Shown: positions 5,101-27,000 of the stretch, one piece after another
Layout: the number at the start of each line of letters is the position of its first letter
How positions within the stretch are numbered: the stretch's first letter is position 1
NCBI GenBank assembly: GCA_904063045.1
Contig: CAJFCJ010000099.1
Span: 1 to 58,356, forward strand
Length of the DNA: 58,356 nt
DNA from: Dimorphilus gyrociliatus
Taxonomy: Eukaryota; Animalia; Annelida
Direction: 5' to 3'
Notes under the pieces: model-generated
Told to the model about the DNA's origin: nothing
The model's database searches: none
What the model saw: the letters and a program-made list of their open reading frames with translations, nothing else
Made by a program: the position numbers and the translations under genes

Positions 5101-8100
5101 ATGAATTAAATTGTGCTGAAAGTGAATTTATGGAATTTCATTGTCTGACTTCTTTAGAAAAAATCAATTATAAGCTGGTTTGTAATTTTGTTGAAAATTG
5201 TCGAGATGGTTCTGATGAAAATTTTTGTCAAACACCAAATTGTCCTCAAAATTACAAGTAACGTCATTTGAGAAATATCTTCATAATGAATAAAACATTT
5301 CCCCTTGTGACAGAAAATGTTCGAATGGACAATGTATACTTAACAGTCATTTGGGAGATGACGAAAAAAATTGTTTTGATGATAGTGATGAAAATCCAGA
5401 ATACATTAAAAATCAGTTTACTAACAGTAGTCTCGTAGTATTTTAATGTTTTGAGTCAAACTATTTTCTTTCTTTTTTTCCTTAGTTACATTTCAAACTT
5501 GCAAAAAGAAAATCATTCAAAACACATCTCTATGTGACTTTAGAAAAGACTGTCAGAATGCTTGGGATGAAGAAATTTTCTCTTGCTATGAAAAAATCCA
5601 GCATTTATCATCTGTTATATGTCATCCCGAAAAATTTGAGCACCGATGTAAAATAAAGTACAGCTCCACAGGATATTTACAAACAAGACCACATTTCCCT
5701 TACGACGAAATTGATTCTTGTCACGTTTCAAAATGCGATATTGGAGAATATTTGTGTCATTTTGAAACATTTTGTATTTCTATTCAACAATTTTGCGATG
5801 GTATCAATCATTGTTTCCATGGAGATGATGAGCTCTTCTGCGGTAAGAAAAAATCATGAAAAAAATAAAATGAATATTTTTCAGGAATACAAACAAAGAA
5901 TTCGACATTTGACAGATAATTTTAATCCAATTGGCGTTTTTATGTGCAAAAATGAAAAGCTGTACTTAATACCAGAGAAAGTTTGTAATGGAATTGTAGA
6001 CTGTGCTCATGGTAGTGATGAACTTTTGTGTTACAACACATCCAAGAAACTTTACAGTCATAATTATTGTATACAAAAGTATTCCTATCATTTAATTTGC
6101 AATAATTCAAAATTCGAAAATGGAATTGAAAAATTTGAAATTTATTCAAAACATTTGAAAGCTTTAACAATAATTGGAACATTTCAATTCACAATTCAGA
6201 ACTCAGAATTTTATAAATTAAGTCTAATTCACATTCAAAATTGTTTGATTGAAAATTTTCCCATTCACTATTTTCCAAATATTGTAATTGTCATTTTAAA
6301 GAATACTAGTCTTTTGGAATTACAAACAAGAGACACTAATGAGAGTTTCAGTCTGGCTTCATTAGTGCAGTATATTGATATTTCATATAATCCGATAAGA
6401 AATCTAACAAAGTTTTTAACAAATTTCAATGGAAGTGTTCTAAGATATTTAGATATTTCGCAAACAAAAATTACAAACCTGAACTCTGAAAATATTCAAA
6501 AATTAAGTAATTTAAGAATTTTTAAATTGGCAAATTGTCGGATAAAAGTTGTTACAATGAAATCGTTTGAATATTTGAAAGAATTGAGAGAATTGCATAT
6601 GAATTCTACAAATTTTCCTTTGAAAAGATCCAATTATATTTCCAGAAGTATACAAAAAGTTCAAAAAGTATTCTCAAACAATTTTAATTTTTGCTGTTTG
6701 GTTTGGAAATATATATCACAATTTGTAATTTGTCAACCGTTTACATCGCAATTTCAAATTTGTTCCACCTTGTTGGCAACTAATGTGATAAGAATTTTAT
6801 TCTGGATTTATGGTACTGGCGGATTTTTGGGAAATATTTTAGCCTTATTTATGTTATTAGTGCATCAAAAAACTTTTGTATCCTATCAAACAACTCTAAT
6901 ATTCGGTGATTTTTTTACGAGTTTATACCTTTTAAATATTGCAATTGTTGATTTATATTATAAAAATCAATACCTTGATGAAGATTACAATTGGAGATAT
7001 GGAATATATTGTAATGGATTAGGTAGTCTGATGTCATTTGCCGTTTTATTATCTTCAAATAGTGTCTCATTATTGACACTTGAAAAATACTTTGCAATAA
7101 CCTCAATCAGAAAAGATACAATTTTAGTCATAAAAAGGAAGGCTTGGTTTATGGGATTAAATGTGGTGACATCCCTGCTATTAGCAACAATTCCAGCTGT
7201 CATATATGATGTAACATAAATTGAGAAATAGTTGACTTTCTTTGTTTTAGAAAGTATATAAATTTTCTTTGTAGAATTTCTTTTCAAAAACGCCAATTTG
7301 TTTTAATATTCATATTAGAAAGGAATTAACGGAAGGATGGTTTTTTTCGTTTTTTTATTTTGGTGTTATACTTCTGTTGAATAATATAATTATTTTTGTT
7401 TCATATGTTTTGATTTTTTTGACTGTAAGAAAGTCAAAAGTAGAAATGAAAAAAATGATTAAATCAGAAAAAAATCAATCAATGTTATCAAAATCAATAA
7501 TTATTATAATCTCTACAAATTTTTTATGTTGGATGCCATTTTGTCTACTTGGAGTATTGGCAATATTTGTTGATTTAAATATCAAAAATAATATATATTA
7601 TTTAATATTTATTATATTTTTACCATTAAATTCTGTTGTTCATTCGGCAGTTTTTATCTATAGTTTTGTTTTTGAATATAGAAATCTTTCAAAGGCAAAA
7701 TTTCAGAAGAAAATGTTTGTTTTGTTTTTAAAAGGACTAATATTTATAACTGTAGTTTTTTTTCAATTTTCCTCACAAATAGGAAATTGTTAGAAGAGGA
7801 GTATTTGTGTAAAGTAAAATCCGATGGTAAAAGGAGTTTTTTTGTTGAATTGTTTATTTTATGACTTACAATTTTTTAAATAGTTGCATCTTTCATCAAT
7901 GACTCAGTGGAAAATAACGTTTTTTCGAAAATGGATGTGATGTGTTTTAGAAGAATTGACTATTCTAATGAAATCTATGACGTTGGCACGGTTTTAGAAC
8001 TATGTAAAAGTGTTATTTCATCAATGGAGTTTCTGGTAGAGAAATCATTCAGTTTGCAAGGACCATTAGATATTGATCAGATATTTTTTAATGTAAGTTT

Positions 8101-8293
8101 TCTCTTCATAAAAGAAAATTGCTTTCTCTTTTCTCTTTTTAATAGTTTTGTTTTTCTTTTCTAGATAAAATCAAAAAAATTTTTCCTTGTAATGGAAAAA
8201 GTTAATTTTTTTAGCATAGAAAATCATCAAGAGAATATTCATAAATATGGAATGCTTTTGAAAAGAATATTGCAAGAAAGAACAGAAATATAA
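2167..8293 (+). CDS. GRL101-like / LGR-type GPCR, multi-exon: signal peptide, SRCR-like, CTL-like, several LDLa, LRR, 7TM, C-terminal kinase-like remnant (paralog A)
   Basis: LDLa motifs (CDGKFDCLLKEDELNC, CNFVENCRDGSDENFC, CDGINHCFHGDDELFC, CNGIVDCAHGSDELLC), LRRs (LRYLDISQTKI, LRIFKLANCRI), hinge NFNFCC, TM1 GGFLGN, TLEKY (DRY equivalent), CWMP, LPLNS. ORF fragments join in frame across short GT-AG introns (e.g. about 5841-5882 and 7212-7274). Last exons 7783-7826, 7884-8092, 8165-8293. The 5' exon boundaries are approximate. Confidence 0.88.
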
Positions 8294-9047
8294 AAAACTT
8301 GTTTTATTCATCTCTTGTCTGTTCTCTCGTTGTATTGTAATTGTATGAATTTTGGGTTTATTACACCTCAATTAGCATTTTCTGAATGTACTTAAACAAA
8401 TGACATCCTACACAAATAGTTTCAACAGATGAAATATTAAAAACAACGAAGCTCAAAAGTATCGTACATAAATGTTTCTTGTTCCTTTTGACATTGGGCT
8501 GTGTCAAATATGGTGTAAGATTAATAACATCACAAAGTAATTTTTTTGTTATGATCTATTCAATTTACTACAAGTTATTTTTTATGATGCTGCCAGTTTT
8601 TTTAATTTGTTGTGAGTAGTATTGAATATTAATTAGAGCCAATCTTTTTATAATATATAATTATATTAATTAGAGCAAATCTTTTGATGTCATAATTTTA
8701 ATTGGACACTTGTTCCAAGTTTGGTAAAATAGATTGAATAAAATTATCTCTGCTAAAGGCTCCTTTTACTTGTTATTATATTAGTTGAAAATTTTTTAAA
8801 TGCTTTTCTTAGCAGATTCTAATGCACTATGCCCAGGGTTCATTCTCGTCTGGGGGCATTTTGTCCAAGTGTCGTTTTGTTCAGGATTCCTGAAAATTTT
8901 CTCTAAAAATACATAATGTCACTTTTTACTGAGAAGATAACAGAGAAGTCTGTTCAGCCCATAACAAAAGCTCAGCCAAACATTGATATAGACACTGGAA
9001 ACTAAATTCTAACCTCAACCTAAGACTTGTACAAGCCTGTCTTAGTA

Positions 9048-9433: not shown

Positions 9434-12245
9434 GGGAACAACAGAAGTCGCCCAGGGCAGAAGTCGCCCAGGACAGAAGTCGCCCAGAAATTGATAGAAG
9501 TCGCCCAGAGCTGTGACAGAAGTCGCCCAGAACTGTGATAGAAGTCGCCCAGGACTATGACAGAAGTCGCCTAGAACTGTAGAAGACATAATGTGTTTGT
9601 TCTTTGTTTCTATTGATTTCTGACAATTGAAATATATAATAAGTATTAATAAATATAGAATGCATCATTTAATAATAACTAAATAGTGAATGAATTAAAT
9701 AATAAAATACTGGCATTCTGTTGAAGGTTTCACATAAATATCATTTATTTGCTTAAACTTGTGCACAAACTTGAGGTTCTATTTGGATCAGTACAGCAGA
9801 AAATTCCCACAATCACAATACAAAGTACAGTATTGAGTTTTAAACTACAAATCTTATGCATTTCATTTAATTTATTAAATTTGTTTCTACATTCAAAGCA
9901 GAATTTTGCCATGTTCATCAATTTCTTTCAAATACCTCTTATGTCAAAGATCATGACAATAAAAAAATTGTAGATATGATATTAATGGTACCCACCACAT
10001 GATGCTAGAAGTAGTAGAGTAGATGTTGCCTCTAGGGTAGATGGTACCGAACTACCAGAATCAAGCCCTTTTATAGGCAAAAGATAAGATATTACATAAC
10101 CAAACATGTTGACAACAACACTACAAAGTACAGTAATGAGTTTTAAACTACAAATCTTATGCATTTCATTTCATTTCTGAGTAGAGTTGACAACATTTTT
10201 CCAAAACTTGTGATGAAGTCATCTGATGAGCTTCAAATTTCTCCCAAATTTTAAATATTTCATTCTGCATATTTTTATATTGTCTTCTTTGATATCTTAA
10301 TATCTTTCTCTCTGATAGCATTCTTTGATATGCTGGGATAAGATCTGCCTCTCATTTTAATTCATCTACTACCAAATAGAATGAAGAATTTGCTCTTAAA
10401 TTGCCATTTAGCCGATTATGGAACCCCTCCACATCATTATTAGTTCTAATAGCATTTTTATAAATTGACCATTGCTTTGGTGACCAAATTCTATCCATCA
10501 TCCAATTCCTTTCAAAGTACTTTATTAGATCACCTAGTTTTTTTACTGATTGAAGGTAATCCTTAATTCTTCCAAATTCTATTGGAATTATGTGAAATGG
10601 AAGAAATGGTAATGCCATAAGCTGCCTCATTTCAAACCACTGTCCTCTTTTTTTTTTAAAGTCTGATGAATATCCAAGTTCCTATTAAAACAAAAAATGT
10701 AGAGTAAATCATCTTATATAAAAATAGCCTCATTTTCACCTGAATTTTTCTGTAAACAGCTTGATTCCAATGGAATAAACAGCCTGTTAGTGTAACACTT
10801 TCCCAATTGTCTAATGCAGCTTTCCATACTGCTCTTTCATAGTCCAGAACAATTTTCTTTGGTGTTTTGTATTCCAAAAGTTCATTTAGTGTCTGTTAAT
10901 AAAATGTTATTTACTTTGAAAAAATTGTATTTTTATAAATACCCTTACCCTAAACAAAATATTGTATGCTTTTTTCTTCTTTGATGTCATAAAAGCAAAG
11001 AGTAGAGGAACTTGTTTTAAGGTGGATGAATGTGTGATTTAGAACCTAAGTGAAAATTGCTACCTCTTTGAATTATACTGGCAGGGCATCTGATTTTCTT
11101 GTTCCTGACACTACATATCCAAATAGTACTACTTTTGTACTGTCCTTTTATAGTAAAAGAATTATTATTGTGTACAAGCAACTTTTTTTCTCTTTGACTT
11201 CCATTTTCAAATACTTTGAAATGACCATCTGCCTCATCAATCTCCTCTGGTAAACTTTCAAAGGAATCCTCAACATCTTCAACAGTTGGTATTCTCTCAT
11301 CATCCAAAGTTGCCTCCATAGTTGATGCAGCACAGTTGATTTCATCTGTGTTCATGTCTTTTAAAGGTAGCTCATTTGCTTCAATAGCATCTGCTGAGAA
11401 ATGAGAAACAACTTGTTCATGATCAACATCCATAGAAGTAACCGTAATGTTTGCTAATGTCTTATCTTTCTCTACAGCATTTTTTATTGGCTCTTTAATA
11501 TTTCCCTCAATAGTAGATTCTTTAGTTGCATCTTTGATTGTACAACTATTATCACACCTTCTCAAAACAATTTTCAAACTTCTGATTTGAATAGATGAGC
11601 AAATGGAGCATAATCCATCTAACAAAATTAAACATAAACATTAAGATTTAAATATGAAAAATCTAACCTGATAAGCATGTCCAATGAAGTTTGTGAGAAC
11701 AATGAGAACATGTTCCTTGTTTTAGTTTATTAATTTTTTTTCTACATTCAAAGCAGAATTTTGCCATGTTGATAAATTTCTTTCAAATACCTGTTATGTC
11801 AAAGATCATGAGAATTAAAAAAAAATTGTAAGATATATACATGATTTTAAAGAGACTAATATTTTTATCAAAACAATTGTTACTTTTGAAGGATTACAAT
11901 GCAGAAAATCACTTAATTCGAATAGCTAACAATTCAATTTTCACAACAAATCAAGTGGTAAAACATTACTCTACAAAAAAAACTGGTAAAACAATTTCTT
12001 TCATTATCACTCAGAGATTACAAATAATAAATACAAACTACTTCATAAATTATTTTCATATATTTTGCATTTTATTAAGCATACTGTAAACTTCTAGTAC
12101 ACTTCTGGGCGACTTCTGTCATAGTCCTGGGTGACTTCTATCACACTTCTGGGCGACTTCTGTCACAGCTCTGGGTGACTTCTATCAATGTCTGGGCGAC
12201 TTCTGTCCTGGGCGACTTCTGCCCTGGGCGACTTCTGTCGTATTC
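9434..12245 (-). mobile_element. Mutator/Phantom-type DNA transposon (E1), internally deleted FLYWCH-MULE transposase
   Basis: Perfect 9-bp TSD aaaattaac (9425-9433, 12246-12254). TIRs of ~140 bp built from tandem cagaagtcgccc units (9434-~9580 and ~12095-12245). FLYWCH-like WICSVRNKKIRCPA...H.H, DYE, GCLFHWNQA and RTNNDVEGFHNRL motifs. The first catalytic DGTF segment is missing. Confidence 0.92.
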
Positions 12246-17652: not shown

Positions 17653-19170
17653 AGTCTTCTTCATTCTTTACATTCTTTAAAACCTAGTTTTTCAATTTGG
17701 TGTAAAAGTATTTTTCACAATGTTAGTTTCACAAGGCATACATTATAATCTTTATAAGCCATCCCCCAAAATGACATTAAGATACTCTTCTTGCAGGCAT
17801 ACCTGTATAGGTATTTTATCTCTGGATATATCATTCAATTATCAAACAAAGTTATCATTGGTCACTTTGGAAAAACTAGGAAAATTGCTTAAAGTTCTAG
17901 TTAGAAATAAAAAAAGACAAAAGAACACTTACTAAAATTATAACGACTATATACTACTTGATTGAGCGACTGTTTAAAAATACAAATTTACAAGGTAATC
18001 ATCAGATGTAATTCTCTGAGTAATAAACCACGATCAAAGCTTTTTTCCGGTATGAGACATCCTATTTGCGCAAATTGTTTTTTGAAAAGCAACAAGACTG
18101 GGCTATTGAAAATTTTAAAAGACTAATTTTCTAATAATCTCTATTAAAAATTCAATATTTAACTTTCGAGATAATGTTAAAGTTAAAAAAAATGCTTTTA
18201 AAGTTTTTAAAATAATCTTTATACTTGTAATTTCATATGTTATTTATTGTTTAGCACTTTCAATTATTAGAATTTTAGCCATTTTTATTGATATTCAAAT
18301 TTCAAATGATCTTTATGCTGGTATTGTTGCTGTCCCCTTTCCATTAACTTCATTGTTAAATATTTCTGTTTTATATTCATTAAACAATCTTTTAGAAATT
18401 TTAAAATTGAAAAATATGAAGAAAAAATTTCTGAACTATATTATTGGAAAAAGGGGTGAAGGTCTGTTAACTTACTAAAAATTGATCATTTTTATAAAGA
18501 TTTATCAATATGTTCTGAGTCAGATAATCAATGAAATCAAATTCATTAGTTCCGATACAGATCTGTGCTGTAGGATAGATGCAACTATTTTATCATGTAT
18601 CGCATAGACATTTATTTTTTCACTTGTTCTTTAATTTTCCTAATCCAATGTTTCCTAATCCAATCCTACTCATGAATATCTTTTAAATAATCCACTTCTT
18701 TCTTCAAAAATCTCTCCTTGCAAATCTCTTTTATCACTCTCTTTTCTGATTGTGGTAATTTGAAAGTCTATCCTACTTTTCACTTTTGCTAAAAAATATA
18801 TAGATATTGATTTCCTTCCATTAAGCCTAATGGAATAATATTTGTCAATATTTTACATTGTTTCTGGTTTTATTACAAGTTTAAGAATTTCTTGCTGTAA
18901 CAACATTTAACAAAACATCTTCAGAAGTAAGAAAAAAGAACACATTAGAATGTTCTTGGCAAAGAAATAATAATGCTTAGTTTATTTGTTTATACGAGTT
19001 GACATGGCAATCATAATGGCATAATAAAGTCTTTGTAAAGATTATCTTTATTATCCTTTTGATCTTTGTTAATGTTTTTTGCATTTTCTAGTTTTATTTA
19101 TATTTTTAATTTTCTCTCTCTCTCTTTCACTTCATTTTGAATTTTAAATAGAATTTATTAGAAATCAATT

Positions 19171-20224
19171 ATGGATAAGAAAGATTATTTCAACTGGACT
19201 ATTCATCATCCAATTTCAAATCCGCTAAGGTCATTTGTTATTGGAATTCCAGTGGTTTTAACATTTTTTTCAACACTTTTGGCTTTGATATTCTTACCAA
19301 AAATAAATCAAATATCAAAGATAACAAAAATTCTATTGTTAAATATAACAATAACAGATTTTATATTTAACTTTCTTTCCATACCGACATCATTGATCAC
19401 ATCAATAATTGGTGTATTTCCATATGGATTTATTTATTGTCAAATTATTGGTGTGACATTCATAACAACTGCTCTGATATCATTATGGTCAATAGCAATC
19501 GTATCAGTTGATCGTTACATTGCTGTAGGATATCCGGATAAGTGAGTAGTAGAATATAAGAAAATGAGTCCTTATGACATTTCTTTGTTTTATATATCTA
19601 TATTTTTCTAGATATAAAACTATTGTAACTGATAGAAGAATCAAAATTGTAATTGCTGCTTCTTGGTTATTTCTATATAGTTTTGGTAGTTTACCCTTCA
19701 TAAGAGTTTTTAAATTTGAATATTATACTTTCCAGGAAAGAGAATTAATATGTTCACTAGAAATAACATTAAATCTACATACATTTGTTGATACTTTTGT
19801 TGGACCATTGTCAGCATCAGCAATAATATTATTCTCAACATTTAAAATTGTTCTTTTTTTAAAAAAACAAAATTCAATTACAGATTCGAAACAATTAAAA
19901 ATTACAACATCAAAAAGAAATTTAAGGATATTCAAAGTTTTAATATTAACATTTGCAACTTTCTATTTATTATGGTTTCCTTTTATTATTTCAATAATTG
20001 GAAGAATGTTTAGTAGTCATTTTCAAAAACGTTCTACTCTTCTCAGTTTTTACTCCTTTTGGTTGATATCATTCAATGGTTTTGTTAATACTTTAATTTA
20101 TGTCTTTATATTTCCTAGTTTGAAGGTGAAATTTTTAAAACTATTAAATATTTGTAGTTTTAAACTGTTCTTTAATAATTCCGTGAACAATTTGGATACT
20201 GAAATTGGATTGTCGAAAGAATGA
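19171..20224 (+). CDS. Orphan class A (rhodopsin-like) GPCR, 2 exons (intron 19542-19611)
   Basis: Seven hydrophobic segments; LLLNITITD (TM2), YCQ, VDRYIAV, LLWFPF, FVNTLIY. The gtgagt...ttctag intron joins PDK to YKT in frame. Confidence 0.9.
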
Positions 20225-21560: not shown

Positions 21561-22586
21561 TATATAATATGAAGTAAATATATTTAGTGTTCACCAACTA
21601 CTGCAATACTGCAACATAACAAATAAATTTTCAGAGGAATTACTGAGAGAAGCAACTATTGTAGAATATATTAGTATAAAGGTAATGGACATTATTTTTT
21701 TATATAGGCCTAGCTTTACTGGAGCAAGTAGTGTTTACACTTGTATAAAATATACCTTTAAATGTAACTTAAAGCAATAAAGAAACTATTTAAAGCTGCT
21801 AATTTAAAGAGATGTAAAACTGTAAAGAAGTTATTTCCTCTTAGAATTACAACTAAATGTCATTCTAGTTTAGCAAACAACAAATGTGTGTAAAAAAATA
21901 TGAAATGTTTAAAAGGGTTTTAAAAACATTTCCTATTACTCCACTACATTAGAAACACCTATATTATATTTTAATAGTCTGTTAGATTGAGTTTTTTATC
22001 AAATGAAAAGTTAAACTGGAAACAGTATCAAACTGTGAGATAATTTAAAAATCTCGTTCTTTTTTGTAGCAGTCGCTTAACAATTTTGCCCAAAGAATTT
22101 CTTCGTTTTTCTTTACCAGTTGTAATTTTTTAAATTTTACCTTTTTAAGAAAAAAAATATCCAACACTTACTTTAAAGAATAAAAATAAGCACCAATTTT
22201 TTAATAGCAAAAACAAGTAAGTTTAAACAACCAGTTAATGGTTAAAGAACTGAACTGATAAGGTGGGGAAATGAATTGCCTTTTATACATTTGCCAAAGC
22301 TTGGGTTCAATTACGTCAAAGGCTTACAAAGTTGAAATCTGACTGTCTCATAATTCTCTAGTAACAAATAAAATATAATCTTCAGATTGGGCTCATGTAA
22401 GCCACACATGCAACTGCAAACTAATCAATGTGTCTTCAGCATATGGTATTAAATAAGGTGTAACAACTTTGACATGCATCTTTTCCATGTTCTTTGTTCC
22501 TTTGTTAATTCCCAAGTAGCCGCCATTTGTTATGATCAAAGAGTCTATTTCGTTCAAAATAGAGTTCTTTCTAAAGATCCCCTAAA

Positions 22587-23715
22587 GAATATGATAGAAG
22601 TCGCCCAGAACAGAACTCGCCCAGAAATAGGCAGAACTCGCCCACCACCTATGGCAGAAGTCACCCAGAACTAAGGCAGAAGTCGCCCAGAGGAGTGACA
22701 GAAGTCGCCCTAGCTATTTCAAATAATGAATTTTTTGATGAACTGTAGAGAGAAGAAAATTTAGTTATCATCTATGAAAAACTTTTGTCTGAAAAGAAGA
22801 TTATCAATTATTAGAAAAAACAGTACAGTGTATACAAGGTTAGGTTACGGTTAGGGTTAAATCATGCATTTGGGAGCATTTTCTGTGGCATCCTGTATCA
22901 TGTACTTTTCAAGGGGCCAACAGAAAATGTCCACATAATATAAAAAAAAACAATTAAATAAGAATAGAGAAGATGAAATGATTTTAGAATAAAAAAGTAA
23001 ATGTTGTATAAATGAGTGAATATATCTCACTTAATTGATTAAATGCTAATGATCTGAGAAAATGAAAATCATGAAATTGCAAGTAAAAAAGTTTAGTTAA
23101 GAACATATTTTTTCAAATGGCTTGAACATTTTTTATATTTTTAATGATGTGGAATTAATACTGCTGTACTTTGTTGTATTGTAATTGTAGGAATTTCTGG
23201 CTCCAACAGTTTCTTGCTCTAAGATAGCTCCAACTGCAAAATCAGATGCATCAGTGGTTAGGTAGAAAGGTTTGTAATAATCAGGTAGCTGTAGGATTGG
23301 AGGTGTTATCATAGCTCTCTTGAGGGTATCAAAGGCTTCTTCAGCTTCTTTAGTCCAGTTCAGTTTGCTATTTTTACCATGTTCCTTTATCAAATTTCAT
23401 AGGGGAAAGAAAAGGTTTTTTTTTTATTTTTTCACCTTTTTTTCACTGTTATACTTTTGTGGACATTTTCTGTCTGAACCACTTTTCAACTATATTAAAT
23501 ATTTACTGTTGTTACTGTACTCTTTCAATTCTAAACTGTCTGCTTCAAGAAAAAAAGTATATTCTTTATTAAGCTTTGTCTAAGTATACTATATAGTTAA
23601 ATAACTATGCAGGGGCGAGTTCTGTCTCTGTCCTGGGCGACTTCAATCAAAGTTCCGGGCGACTTCTGTCATAGGTAGTGGGCGACTTCTGCCCTGGGCG
23701 ACTTCTGTTGATCCC
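22587..23715. mobile_element. Non-autonomous derivative of the E1 MULE family carrying foreign fragments (E3)
   Basis: Same cagaagtcgccc tandem TIRs as E1 (22587-~22710, ~23610-23715). Direct repeat gatcccctaaa at 22576-22586 and 23710-23720. Interior holds a MULE C-terminal remnant, two MITE ends and a gypsy fragment. Confidence 0.85.
23195..23393 (-). pseudogene. pol: Ty3/gypsy RT-RNase H connection fragment
   Basis: LNWTKEAEEAFDTLKRAMITPPILQLPDYYKPFYLTTDASDFAVGAILEQ is the canonical gypsy RT-RNase H linker motif. Confidence 0.9.
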
Positions 23716-24036: not shown

Positions 24037-27000
24037 TTATAATTTTCTGTTTATTAAGATCTTTTTAACAAATTTTCCAAATTTTAATATATCAATTTCT
24101 TCATTTTCTTTAGTTTTTGCCCTGAATTTCTCATAAAAAACAAAATATTGCAAATTTTTTTCCTGTTTCAGTTAAATATTAAATAAATATTATCACAAAA
24201 AAAATCTATACCTTATTTAAATCATAATATATGCAATCTTTAAAATCTTCACATACCAGTGAGAGGTTTTTCTTATGAACAGTAAAAATAGCTTTACATA
24301 AATGTTGACAACATTTGATATATTCAGAATTTTTATATAGTAAATTATTTGAATAATGCAGTTTTTTTAAAAAATCTTTATGCTTAATATTTAAAAAATA
24401 ATTCTCCAAATCTTCATTCATAAAGTTTAGCACTGCAAAAAAAATTGTTTTGGTTTTTTAAATTTGAAAAATGTTCATTTAAAATAAAAAATACATTCAT
24501 TGAAAATGAGATTTTTTGCAGAATTAATAAGACATAATCTATTAATAAAAAACTGGTTTATAGAATAATGTTAGTAGAATCTAGCATTATGCAATATTCA
24601 AATGTACTGTCTAGACTAGATGCCTGTTGGACTGGGAATATTCTGTTAAAGAAATTATAAATTTCTTTAAGTTTTTAACAAAACCCTGTGCTGATATTAT
24701 AATGTCTTTTCATATTTTATTCCCCAGCTGTTTTTTAACCAACACACACCTATAACAGAATCTCATAGAATTCTAGATTCTATCAGTATTTTGTCTAGAA
24801 AATAACTTCAGCATTTTTAAAAGCAAATTAATTTAAATATTTTAACTGTTTTTGCTTCCTTAATTGCTTTCTTAATCGAAGAATGTGAATAAATTCATTA
24901 GTCGAAAAAATGAAAGGATTTAAAAGAGAATTTAATGGAATTAAACAAACAACTATGGCAACATAAATATCATTTTTGAAATGAATCTTAAAAATTTCAG
25001 ACAAAATAGCTTTTTTATGAAAAAAAATTGAAAGTATCAAGAATGCATAAATGTTTTATTTTTAATTCTTACATAATGTTGATACAGGAAACCAACAAAG
25101 CAAGTTTGAAATTGTAATTAGATAAATACTCTTTGAAATAGTTTTTCTATTTTTTTTAGTTGTTGCATGCATTTTAAATGTCAGTGATTTTTTAATTATT
25201 AATATTAATTTAATATATAAAATTGAAATAATAAGACTAAGAATAAAGAGCATAATACCAAAAATATAGAATGAGTAAAGCCATCCAACTGATTTATCAG
25301 ATCTAATTGGTATGTTAAAACAAATTGTAGATTTCTTATAATAAGTCTGAAAACAGAAATTTTTTAATTTGAAATTTTTTGAAAACTTAAATTGGATTCT
25401 CTTACATCGAAAAGTATCAATGGTATTGATGAGAGAATTAAACATATAAAAAGTATTGTAAAGAAAATAATATAATTAAATTTTATAATAATTGGTGTTT
25501 TTAAAGGTGTGCATATAGATTCGTATCTTTCAATTGTTATTAATAATAAAATACATGTTGAAAATAATAGTGAAAATGTTAAAATTGTTCCTAAAAATGA
25601 ACAAAAAACACTTTGCCTCCAAGATTTTTCTATAAATATATATTGATTGCCAGAAAAGTAAAAATCAACTATTGCAACAGTTAAAACATAAAGTGATGTT
25701 AAAAAATCACCAAAATTTAAACATAACCTAAACAATTTTCCAGCAATTTTTCTCTTTAATATAATTGTAAATGATAAGAAATTTCCTAACATTCCTGAAA
25801 TTCCAATTATCCAAAATGTTAATTTTAAAAAATAAGTTGGAATTATATTATGACAAGTAAGAAAAACTGGTGGATTTGGTTTACAAAATATTTCTTGTCC
25901 AAAAATTTTCCAAGCAAGACAACATAATTGAAAATTATCATTTTCTATATAATTCAAATTTATCATATTGTATATGATATGTTGTAAATAATCTGCTGGA
26001 AATATTGTTTCTGCTGCAATGAGATACTCAACGTTTTTTAATGGAGTTAAAGAATTTTTCTCAATAGATAATAGTATACATTTAGTGAATTTAAAAAATT
26101 TTAAATGTTTAAAAGATTTAAATGTGTCCTTTTTTAAAATTCCAACTTTCGTTAATGAAAAATCGAATTTCATAAGATATTTAGTGTGCAATTGATTTAG
26201 AAAATCTAAATTACTGAATGGATTATTTGAAATATTAAAAATTTGAAGTATTTGAAATTTTGAATATATCAAGAAGTTAAAGTTTGTTATATTATTATTT
26301 GAAATATCCATATAAATAATATTTGGCATAATTAATCTTTTTATAGATTTCAATAAGAAATTTTTATGAATAGAAAGAATATGGAGATTAAAATTTTCAT
26401 TGATATTTTCAAATTTAAAATTTCCTTCCAATACAGCTTTTTTTAAATATTGATCAATTTCAAAATGTGATGTTAAATCGATAAATTTACAATTAATCTC
26501 ATAAAGACCATTGTAAGTGCATATACTTTTATTATATTGCATTGTAGGTATTGAACAAGATATTTCATCACTGCCTTTTTCACAATCAACGTTTCCATTG
26601 CAAAGTTGATAATCGCTTAGAAATATTTTCTCATTTCTACATTTAAAATATCCTTTGGCAACAAAGTTTTCTGTTTTTTTTAGGAATCCTTCCTAATAAG
26701 AAACATTTTTTATAAAAATAAAATTTTTCCTTTTTACCACAATGAATTTCATCATCTCCATAAATACATTGGGATAAACCATCACAAATGAGATAGAGTG
26801 GAATACAATAACCTTCCAAATAGCACTTATATTCTCCTATTGAACATTTCATGTCTTCACAATGATACAACTCAGAAAATGGAAATTGAATTCTAGTGAG
26901 AAAATTATTCATAGAATCATATGTAATTTTACATAATTTAGGAATTGATTCCTTAAAAATTTTTATAGATTTGCTAGGATCACAAAAAAATTCATCACTT

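What the first reader, a model, noticed from the sequence alone, without database searches (positions are those of the whole stretch)
7715..8293. LGR/GRL101-type GPCR appears to continue into a degenerate tyrosine-kinase-like C-lobe (GPCR-pseudokinase fusion), paralog A
Seen: the ORF track ends this receptor at 7793 by reading into an intron. A GT donor at 7715 and three AG/GT-bounded exons (7783-7826, 7884-8092, 8165-8293; phases 2, 1, 0) instead extend the frame by ~125 aa: KLLEEEYLCKVKSD-VASFINDSVEN...VLELCKSVISSMEFLVEKSFSLQGPLDIDQIFFN-IKSKKFFLV...ENIHKYGMLLKRIL*. Established: tyrosine kinases have an alphaE/catalytic-loop pattern like LLxFAxQIASGMEYLxSKKFVHRDLAARNILV, and subdomain IX reads DVWSYGxLLWEI. 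Inference: SSMEFLVEKSF and NIHKYGMLL match these two segments, while HRD is replaced by LQG and no Gly loop, VAIK or DFG is visible. That implies a catalytically dead half-kinase tail on a class A 7TM receptor, an architecture not typical of vertebrate LGR/RXFP or the described Lymnaea GRL101. It could be a scaffold or nucleotide-independent signalling module. Intron retention would give a short-tailed isoform.
Basis: partly seen in the sequence, partly recalled or inferred. Interest (0 to 1): 0.88.

Follow-up and report, generated by a model that had tools for sequence, protein, structure and literature searches.

The report
Hormone-type receptor with dead half-kinase tail
Three small, previously unread exons give this LDLa/LRR-type G-protein-coupled receptor a conserved 125-residue cytoplasmic tail that is a catalytically dead, truncated remnant of a protein kinase. 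The same tail occurs on related receptors from molluscs to amphioxus, and I found no paper that describes it.

Summary
Exons 7783-7826, 7884-8092 and 8165-8293 are open and in frame, have GT/AG borders, and are separated by 57-72 nt introns like the gene's other intron.

The tail is real coding sequence. Paralog B in this window and at least five paralogs on outside contigs carry a homologous tail with the same 44-nt exon and the same phases (2, 1, 0). One paralog has lost an intron and keeps the frame.

The kinase reading also holds, through a chain of profile and structure evidence:
- Profiles of the tail hit only protein kinases in the PDB, at helix alphaE.
- The tail profile matches the C-terminal tails of annotated GRL101-like receptors from mollusc, nemertean, mite, hemichordates and amphioxus (hhalign E 1.5e-8).
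- Those tails hit Pfam Pkinase (amphioxus 1.1e-11, above the cut-off) and PDB kinases and pseudokinases.
- An AlphaFold model superposes on kinase beta4-to-alphaF (Z up to 10.4).

No Gly loop, VAIK, HRD Asp, DFG, activation segment or alphaG-I is present, so the domain cannot catalyse. "Tyrosine" kinase specifically is not supported. No RNA junction reads were obtained.

The scan reported the same architecture before on another piece of this genome (s1-080282, s1-080294). My tests were made independently and agree.

The parts
5711..7210 (+). Large exon of receptor A: LDLa, leucine-rich repeats, TM1-TM4. The start shown is the ORF start; the true acceptor was not determined. DRY is degenerate (EKY).
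   Evidence: ORF. Pfam LRR_8 1.8e-8 and Ldl_recept_a 7e-4. 31.7% identical to paralog B. The donor GT at 7211 matches B's exon end. An X1 contig stops matching exactly at 7210.
7275..7714 (+). Exon with TM5-TM7 and helix 8. It ends in phase 2 at a GT donor (7715). NPxxY is degenerate (HSAVF).
   Evidence: Pfam 7tm_1 3.9e-8. Acceptor at 7274/7275. The donor lies 30 codons after the TM7 Pro, as in B, L001 and L011.
7715..7782 (+). Intron of 68 nt. If it were retained, the frame would run on to a stop at 7791-7793, giving the short-tailed product that the ORF track shows.
7783..7826 (+). Tail exon 2, 44 nt (phase 2 in, phase 1 out), a linker of about 14 residues.
   Evidence: The same 44-nt exon with the same phases occurs in B (24495-24538), L001 and L007. 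In L011 it is fused in frame to the next exon.
7884..8092 (+). Tail exon 3: beta4/beta5 remnant, helix alphaE, degenerate catalytic loop (LQG in place of HRD, one extra residue), beta7.
   Evidence: Aligned with 6 paralogs (A5). PDB profile hits are all kinases at alphaE. hhalign against annotated tails gives E 4e-6. Protein language-model features point to kinase clusters. An exact X1 contig covers 7909-8071.
8165..8293 (+). Last coding exon: beta8, a very short stand-in for the activation segment, helix alphaF (NIHKYGMLLKRIL), stop codon at 8291-8293.
   Evidence: Aligned with 5 paralogs; I, G and L are invariant (A6). hhalign against annotated tails gives E 4e-4 at the DIxxFGxLV motif. The AlphaFold helix 107-125 has pLDDT up to 92.
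24037..24538 (-). Homologous three-exon tail of paralog B: 24495-24538, 24212-24432, and 24040-24162 plus stop 24037-24039. The donor of its TM7 exon is at 24846.

Best explanation
Positions 7715-8293 hold the last three coding exons of receptor gene A, an LDLa/LRR/7TM receptor of the GRL101-like LGR kind. Splicing at 7714/7783, 7826/7884 and 8092/8165 adds a cytoplasmic domain of about 125 residues.

That domain is a strongly diverged, truncated protein-kinase-like domain. It has a beta4/beta5 remnant, helix alphaE, a catalytic loop without the catalytic Asp or Asn, the beta7-beta8 hairpin, almost no activation segment, and helix alphaF. The protein then ends. It descends from a fuller pseudokinase domain that an old subfamily of these receptors carries in molluscs, a nemertean, a mite, hemichordates and amphioxus.

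What is shown and what is inferred:
- Shown: the exons, their conservation, and the kinase ancestry.
- Inferred: with no N-lobe, VAIK Lys, HRD Asp or DFG, the domain cannot bind nucleotide in the usual way or transfer phosphate.
- Inferred: because it has been kept under selection in many paralogs and phyla, it most likely acts as a folded docking or regulatory module on the receptor's C-terminus. Possible roles are partner recruitment, receptor pairing or trafficking, as in other pseudokinases.
For: Gene model:
- The frame is open and the borders are canonical.
- Intron position and phase are conserved in 4-5 paralogs, and one paralog has lost an intron and keeps the frame.
- An X1 contig lies inside exon 3.

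The tail is coding and conserved:
- A versus B gives z 9.7.
- Tails were found downstream of paralogs in L001, L006, L007, L009 and L011.

Kinase ancestry:
- PDB hmmsearch with exon-3 profiles returns almost only kinases, aligned at alphaE before HRD: BTK at E 0.023, then CLK, CaMKII, DYRK, GCN2 and RAF at 0.04-0.4.
- A profile of annotated tails from other phyla ranks all six spliced tails above 3000 shuffles (A at E 0.0034). hhalign of the six tails against that alignment gives probability 95.5%, E 1.5e-8.
- Those annotated tails hit Pfam Pkinase at 1.1e-11 (45 bits, cut-off 31.7) and PK_Tyr_Ser-Thr at 2.4e-6.
- They also give 272 PDB hits at E<=0.01. The 60 listed are all named kinases or kinase-fold proteins, led by JAK, the pseudokinase VRK3, TYK2 and BRAF.
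- The AlphaFold2 model of tail A has pTM 0.64 and pLDDT 70-92 for residues 31-127.
- The 50 Foldseek matches shown (of at least 500) are all kinase domains, probability 0.95-1.0.
- VIA-align Z reaches 10.4, covering model residues 2-126 against, for example, ABL1 294-438.
- Protein language-model features of exon 3 of A, and more weakly of B, point to kinase clusters.
Against: - Pfam finds no kinase in tail A itself, even at E<=10.
- The direct PDB E-values of the window family's profiles are only 0.02-0.4, and exon 4 alone finds nothing. The case therefore rests on a chain through homologues.
- The AlphaFold alignment contained those kinase-like homologues, so the model is not independent of them.
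- Foldseek E-values are 0.01-0.09, none at or below 0.001.
- No read crosses a tail junction, and the kind of run X1 is uncertain.
- Receptor A also has degenerate DRY and NPxxY motifs, so it may be a fast-evolving, partly decayed copy.
- The proposed scaffold function is inference only.
Confidence: 0.82

Rival explanations
1. The exons are real and conserved, but the domain is an unrelated small alpha/beta module. Its likeness to kinase alphaE and alphaF would then be convergent or a product of composition.
For: There is no direct Pfam hit for tail A. Direct PDB E-values are 0.02-0.4. Exon 4 alone finds nothing. Identity to the annotated tails is only 9-17%.
Against: - Across the three exon-3 profiles, all listed PDB hits but three are kinases, from several kinase groups, in one register.
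- Three landmarks (alphaE-LH, the h-x-I-h-h-N strand, DIxxFG) come in kinase order.
- hhalign to tails that pass Pfam's kinase cut-off gives E 1.5e-8.
- The structural matches are all kinases.
Confidence: 0.08
2. Gene A now ends at the 7791-7793 stop. The downstream exons would be decaying relics of a former tail, or be used only in a minor isoform.
For: The donor at 7715 (GTTTGT) is weak. No junction reads were obtained. Receptor A has degenerate DRY and NPxxY motifs.
Against: All three exons keep open frames and good splice sites. The donor position is conserved to the codon in four paralogs. Tail A scores as a family member (E 0.0034 against 3000 decoys). An exact X1 contig lies in exon 3, at the same depth as the contigs in the receptor exons, and none lies in an intron.
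Confidence: 0.07
3. The tail is an active, unusual kinase or nucleotide-binding module.
For: Some pseudokinases bind ATP or catalyse by non-canonical means (general knowledge).
Against: There is no N-lobe, Gly-rich loop or VAIK. HRD is LQG. There is no DFG or activation segment, and the protein ends 8 residues after alphaF.
Confidence: 0.02

Closest known systems
GRL101-like / type C LGR receptors (Lymnaea GRL101, RXFP1/2 relatives)
   Same: It has LDLa modules, leucine-rich repeats and a rhodopsin-type 7TM. The best database relatives are proteins that their sources name 'GRL101-like' or 'RXFP1'.
   Different: It carries a folded kinase-derived tail. Several other GRL101-like proteins in the same hit list (P0084, P0117, P0120) end in plain low-complexity tails. 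Papers that discuss GRL101 do not mention such a domain. Receptor A also lacks the canonical DRY and NPxxY residues.
C-terminal tails of annotated giant GRL101-like proteins: Branchiostoma XP_078576616/XP_035670292, Ptychodera XP_070539486 and XP_070573185, Saccoglossus XP_006813017, Glandiceps XP_077983118, Haliotis XP_071080748, Mytilus CAC5369999, Lineus XP_064641999, Dinothrombium RWS13828
   Same: The tail sits at the same place after TM7 and has the same landmarks (alphaE ending in LH, no HRD Asp, DIxxFGxLV, protein ends soon after). hhalign gives E 1.5e-8. The amphioxus protein's recorded Pfam families include CUB, SRCR, C-type lectin, LDLa and LRR as well as 7tm_1 and kinase.
   Different: The amphioxus tail still has recognisable alphaC, beta4, beta5 and a DFS in place of DFG (Pkinase profile positions 37-150). 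The window's tail is shorter and more diverged, and it shares a one-residue insertion in the former catalytic loop with the Mytilus protein.
GPCR-kinase fusions (oomycete/amoebozoan GPCR 'bigrams', choanoflagellate GPCR-TKL/K, choanoflagellate and sponge GPCR-TK)
   Same: A 7TM receptor is followed on the same chain by a protein-kinase-type domain (PMC12716839, PMC6033456).
   Different: Those fusions have complete, presumably active kinase domains and other 7TM families. PMC12716839 reports none in metazoans other than sponges. Here the receptor is a bilaterian LGR, and the kinase part is dead and truncated.
Pseudokinase domains (JAK JH2, VRK3, STRADalpha, KSR, RNase L)
   Same: The catalytic residues are lost and the core fold is kept. 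These are among the best sequence or structure matches of the tail family. HRD becomes HGN in JAK JH2 and VRK3, much like LNG/LQG/HxQ in the tails.
   Different: Those domains are full bilobal structures, and many still bind nucleotide. This one lacks the N-lobe and alphaG-I.

Membership tests
Eukaryotic protein kinase (ePK) superfamily, by descent | Significant profile similarity to Pkinase / PK_Tyr_Ser-Thr | tested here: inconclusive
   Direct test: no Pfam hit for tail A at E<=10; family profiles against the PDB give E 0.02-0.4, kinases only. Through homologues: tail family against annotated tails gives E 1.5e-8, and those tails against Pkinase give 1.1e-11, above the cut-off.
Eukaryotic protein kinase (ePK) superfamily, by descent | Core fold: alphaE, catalytic-loop turn, beta7-beta8, alphaF packed together | tested here: met
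   The AlphaFold2 model has pTM 0.64. The Foldseek matches shown are all kinases, probability 0.95-1.0. VIA-align Z is 8-10.4 over about 100-112 residues. Caveat: the alignment fed to AlphaFold held kinase-like homologues.
Active protein kinase | N-lobe with Gly-rich loop and VAIK lysine | tested here: not met
   Only about 45 residues precede alphaE, with no GxGxxG and no VAIK-like strand.
Active protein kinase | HRD catalytic Asp and catalytic-loop Asn | tested here: not met
   The aligned positions read S-L-Q-G-(P)-L-D-I-D-Q in A. Paralogs have LNG, LVC or FRQ.
Active protein kinase | DFG motif, activation segment with APE, helices alphaG-alphaI | tested here: not met
   About 12 residues lie between beta8 and alphaF, against roughly 34 in PKA (the PKA figure is from my own knowledge). 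The protein ends 8 residues after alphaF.
GRL101-like / type C LGR | LDLa module(s) plus leucine-rich repeats N-terminal to a rhodopsin-type 7TM | tested here: met
   LRR_8 at 34.4 bits (cut-off 27). 7tm_1 at 33.5 bits (cut-off 30.5). Ldl_recept_a at 20.1 bits, below its cut-off of 24.1. The nearest named relatives are GRL101-like proteins.
GRL101-like / type C LGR | Class A activation microswitches (D/ERY, NPxxY) | tested here: not met
   A has EKY and HSAVF. Paralog B has ERY and NPFIF.
GPCR-kinase fusion proteins | 7TM and kinase-type domain on one polypeptide | tested here: inconclusive
   The exon structure and annotated homologues put both on one chain. No transcript of this gene spanning both was seen. 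The kinase part is only a remnant.

The most novel reading that the evidence does not exclude
The tail is the relic of an ancestral animal receptor in which an LGR-type hormone receptor was fused to a working protein kinase, coupling ligand binding directly to phosphorylation. After the loss of catalysis, the conserved alphaE-alphaF core was kept as a G-protein-independent signalling or pairing module. If so, this large orphan receptor subfamily, including copies such as A that have lost the DRY and NPxxY switches, would signal mainly through its pseudokinase tail.
Probability: 0.15. Interest if true: 0.85.

Novelty: new variant of a known kind. Interest (0 to 1): 0.68.

Why it matters
GPCR-kinase fusions are known from oomycetes, amoebae, choanoflagellates and sponges. 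The most recent survey I could read states that none was found in other animals (PMC12716839). Here an LGR/GRL101-type receptor subfamily spread across bilaterian phyla carries a kinase-derived domain, nearly complete in amphioxus and cut down to a half-domain in this genome.

This gives an orphan receptor family a second, testable signalling handle. It is also a natural series of pseudokinase reduction, showing how little of the kinase core can persist as a stable module. Finally, it corrects the gene models: ORF-based or short-tailed predictions miss the domain.

Tried and rejected
- **Pfam on tail A:** nothing relevant; the best hits were CARDS_D3 at 0.018 and an L-A virus coat protein at 0.037, taken as noise.
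- **Exon-4 profiles against the PDB:** no hits.
- **MAFFT of the full tail with exon pieces as separate rows:** exon 3 was misaligned onto exon 4 (A7 and A8). I discarded these and used full-length annotated tails instead (A10).
- **The search for homologous proteins with the amphioxus tail:** nothing, or only the query itself, because of the length window and the need for shared words. I therefore found no version with an intact kinase.
- **The window's own protein is not in the protein libraries.** The best hits to its large exon are exon-sized ORF fragments of 33-37% identity from Logan contigs.
- **L004:** the paralog's downstream region looks decayed and was left out.
- **L012 and the P0004 place:** neither reaches the tail, as one contig is too short and the other returned no DNA.
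- **Reads:** three of the four runs laid are DNA (one of them bisulfite-type) and say nothing about splicing.
- **My first guess that FINDSVENNVF is helix alphaD:** dropped. Alignment with homologues and the model place that stretch nearer beta4/beta5, and it is poorly predicted (pLDDT below 50 for residues 1-30).
Full report
**1. What is in the sequence**

The window is AT-rich (29% G+C). It carries a receptor gene on the + strand, here called gene A.
- A long ORF (5711-7219) encodes an LDLa module, leucine-rich repeats and TM1-4 (Pfam LRR_8 1.8e-8, Ldl_recept_a 7e-4).
- A second ORF (7377-7793) encodes TM5-7 (7tm_1 3.9e-8).
- The two are joined by a 64-nt intron, 7211-7274. The donor GT follows the codon for D, as in paralog B, and the acceptor sits at 7274/7275.

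- GT at 7715; exon 7783-7826; GT at 7827; exon 7884-8092; GT at 8093; exon 8165-8293.
- Phases are 2, 1 and 0, and the introns are 68, 57 and 72 nt.
- The joined frame stays open for 127 codons to the stop at 8291-8293.
- If the first of these introns stays in, the frame ends at 7791-7793. That is the short product the ORF list shows.

**2. The tail is real coding sequence**

A second receptor gene, paralog B, lies on the minus strand (about 26836-24037). It is 31.7% identical to A in the large exon.
- Downstream of its TM7 exon I found the same layout: a 44-nt exon (24495-24538), an exon at 24212-24432 and a last exon at 24040-24162, with phases 2, 1, 0.
- The two spliced tails align with a local score of 98, against 35.7 +/- 6.4 for 2000 composition-preserving shuffles (z 9.7).

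A search of 1.84 billion representative proteins with A's large exon found no copy of the window's own protein. It did find many exon-sized ORFs of 30-37% identity from assembled public runs. I fetched the contigs around nine of the ten best hits. Homologous tails lie downstream of the receptor exons in L001 (also L002/L003), L007 (also L008), L009, L011 and, cut by the contig end, L006.
- In L001 and L007 the small exon is again 44 nt, with the same phases.
- In L011 the intron between tail exons 2 and 3 is absent and the frame runs straight through. This shows, without RNA, that these two exons are read together in that frame.
- A phase-2 GT donor lies exactly 30 codons after the Pro of the TM7 P[LI]NS motif in A, B, L001 and L011.

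Chance ORFs in AT-rich DNA would not give intron positions conserved to the codon, together with protein-level conservation, among copies only about 30% identical.

**3. Transcript evidence is thin**

Only one run (X1, kind uncertain) could be RNA. The others are DNA, one of them with C>T conversion.

X1 is low-depth (3-6). It gives four exact contigs on the stretch laid (5600-8500): 6284-6453, 6646-6871, 6938-7210 and 7909-8071.
- All four lie inside predicted exons. The last lies inside tail exon 3, at a depth like the receptor exons.
- The third stops matching exactly at exon end 7210 and runs on for 15 letters unlike the genome, whereas the DNA run X2 is continuous there. This looks like a spliced transcript.
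- The tool did not print those 15 letters, and no contig crosses a tail junction.

Transcription of tail exon 3 is therefore likely. The junctions are not shown.

**4. Is it kinase-derived?**

*Direct tests on tail A are weak.* Pfam finds nothing. Several independent leads nevertheless point the same way.
- Protein language-model features of exon 3 of A retrieve kinase clusters: 65 of 100 hits, scores 0.90-0.91. For exon 3 of B, which is 20% identical to A, every named hit is a kinase family, though at low scores.
- A profile of exon 3 from A and B finds BTK's alphaE helix as best PDB hit (E 0.26). With four sequences the E-value is 0.023, and Nek7, CLK1 and GCN2 appear. With seven sequences the 60 hits listed (of 86) are all kinases (CLK1/3/4, CaMKII, DYRK3, GCN2, BTK, RAF1; E 0.04-0.4). 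The alignments shown, and the chain positions of the other hits, place them on alphaE, just before HRD.
- Exon 4 alone finds nothing.

*The decisive link came from annotated full-length relatives in the hit list.* Nine GRL101-like proteins carry a C-terminal stretch that matches the tail profile: Mytilus, Haliotis, Lineus, Dinothrombium, Saccoglossus, two from Ptychodera, Glandiceps, and Branchiostoma.

On these tails Pfam reports:

| Protein | Pfam family | E-value | Bits (cut-off) |
|---|---|---|---|
| Amphioxus (P0125) | Pkinase, profile positions 37-150 | 1.1e-11 | 45.1 (31.7) |
| Ptychodera (P0113) | PK_Tyr_Ser-Thr | 2.4e-6 | 27.5 (23.1) |
| Glandiceps (P0139) | PK_Tyr_Ser-Thr | 9.6e-5 | 22.2 (23.1) |
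| Ptychodera (P0134), Saccoglossus (P0149) | PK_Tyr_Ser-Thr | about 4e-4 | about 20 (23.1) |

- A profile of the nine tails gives 272 PDB hits at E<=0.01. The 60 listed are all named kinases or kinase-fold proteins. They are led by a JAK (both its pseudokinase and kinase domains), the pseudokinase VRK3 (1.2e-6), TYK2 and BRAF; KSR, STRADalpha and RNase L also appear.
- The amphioxus tail alone matches PHKG2 and Rad53 from the alphaC region to DFG (E 8e-4).

*The window's family is tied to these tails.*
- hhalign of exon 3 against the nine tails gives E 4e-6. Exon 4 gives E 4e-4, further along the template in the right order.
- The whole spliced tails of six paralogs against the nine give probability 95.5%, E 1.5e-8 over 75 columns, from alphaE to alphaF.
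- The nine-tail HMM ranks all six spliced tails above 3000 shuffled decoys (A at E 0.0034).
- A and the Mytilus protein share a one-residue insertion in the former catalytic loop and an FIND motif upstream.

*Structure.* I predicted tail A with AlphaFold2 from alignment A10.
- The model has pTM 0.64 and pLDDT 70-92 for residues 31-127. It has a long helix (49-68), short strands (82-85, 90-94) and a final helix (107-125). The first 30 residues are poorly predicted.
- The 50 Foldseek PDB matches shown (of at least 500) are all kinase domains: probability 0.95-1.0, E 0.01-0.09, TM 0.45-0.54 by query length.
- VIA-align gives Z up to 10.4 (WNK1), 9.5-9.7 for the RNase L pseudokinase, and about 8 for ABL. 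Model residues 2-126 align to, for example, ABL1 294-438, that is from about beta4 to the end of alphaF.
- The AlphaFold alignment contained the kinase-like homologues, so this agrees with the sequence evidence but is not independent of it.

**5. What the domain lacks**
- There is no room for an N-lobe, and no Gly-rich loop or VAIK.
- The HRD position reads LQG in A (LNG, LVC or FRQ in paralogs; LNG in amphioxus; HxQ, HNS or HGF in hemichordates).
- The catalytic-loop Asn is replaced, and there is no DFG (amphioxus has DFS).
- The stretch between beta8 and alphaF is about 12 residues instead of the usual 30-35.
- Every tail ends 10-20 residues after alphaF, so alphaG-I are missing.
- The alphaF Asp or Asn and the following Gly are the best-kept positions. 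This fits a preserved structural core rather than a preserved active site.

The domain is therefore a dead, truncated pseudokinase. 'Tyrosine' kinase is not supported: the best-preserved homologue scores higher on Pkinase and resembles CaMK-type kinases.

**6. How it probably works**

Shown: a conserved folded module on the cytoplasmic end of an LGR-type receptor.

Inferred: it cannot catalyse. Being kept across phyla and across many diverged paralogs, it most likely serves as a docking, pairing or regulatory surface, as other pseudokinases do.

Receptor A has also lost the canonical class A switches (EKY for DRY, HSAVF for NPxxY), whereas B keeps ERY and NPFIF. At least copy A may therefore depend on something other than classical G-protein activation. 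Alternatively, it may simply be a fast-evolving copy.

**7. Comparison with what is known**
- Papers on GRL101 that I could search do not mention a kinase-like tail.
- At database level, the amphioxus protein's precomputed Pfam list already holds PF00069 and PF07714 next to 7tm_1, LDLa, LRR, SRCR, C-type lectin and CUB. The raw signal exists but seems undescribed.
- Other GRL101-like proteins in the hit list have plain tails. The tail therefore marks a subfamily.

**8. Earlier scan notes**

The scan noted the same architecture on another piece of this genome (s1-080282, s1-080294), and its follow-up agents reached the same reading. I saw those notes only after my own tests. They add a claim of presence in corals, spiders and echinoderms, which I did not test. 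Note s1-080949, on paralog B, is confirmed here.

**9. Verdict**

The remaining gaps are RNA junction evidence for this gene and any functional data.

Noticed in passing
window 5711-7210 and 7623-7660: Receptor A has lost the canonical class A switch residues: EKY in place of DRY, and HSAVF in place of NPxxY. Paralog B keeps ERY and NPFIF.
   Followed up: partly
L011:2622-2870: In this paralog the intron between tail exons 2 and 3 is missing and the frame is kept. This is an intron presence/absence difference within the family.
   Followed up: yes
window 18119-18475 (+): A lone ORF resembling TM6-TM7 of these receptors (25% identical to A's TM5-7), with no neighbouring receptor exons found. 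It is probably a gene relic.
   Followed up: no
window 19162-19542 and 19568-20221 (+): An ordinary two-exon rhodopsin-type GPCR (DRY, NTLIY) without LRR ectodomain or kinase-like tail, lying between the two LGR-type genes.
   Followed up: no
window 22031-22129 (-): A short ORF ending in SLGKIVKRLLQKRTRF matches the last tail exon weakly (E 1.5e-4 in a small set). No exon-3 partner was found, so it may be a stray relic of a third tail.
   Followed up: partly
window 10352-11625 (-), 23136-23396 (-): Transposon remains lie around the receptor genes: MULE-type transposase ORFs, and a retroelement RT/RNase H-like ORF just downstream of paralog B.
   Followed up: no
window 5600-8500 (runs X1-X5): Run X4 shows systematic C>T differences, so it is a bisulfite-type library. 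Run X1 (2017) is labelled as another organism than X2 and X4, yet is letter-identical over 832 bases, so it may be the same species under two names. From memory only and unverified, the pattern (2020 genome study with a second species, 2024 methylome, 60-70 nt introns) would fit a dinophilid annelid.
   Followed up: no
L001-L011 (Logan contigs): The organism or organisms behind these contigs hold many diverged paralogs (30-37% identity) of this receptor. The family is strongly expanded in this lineage, although the tails stay recognisable.
   Followed up: partly
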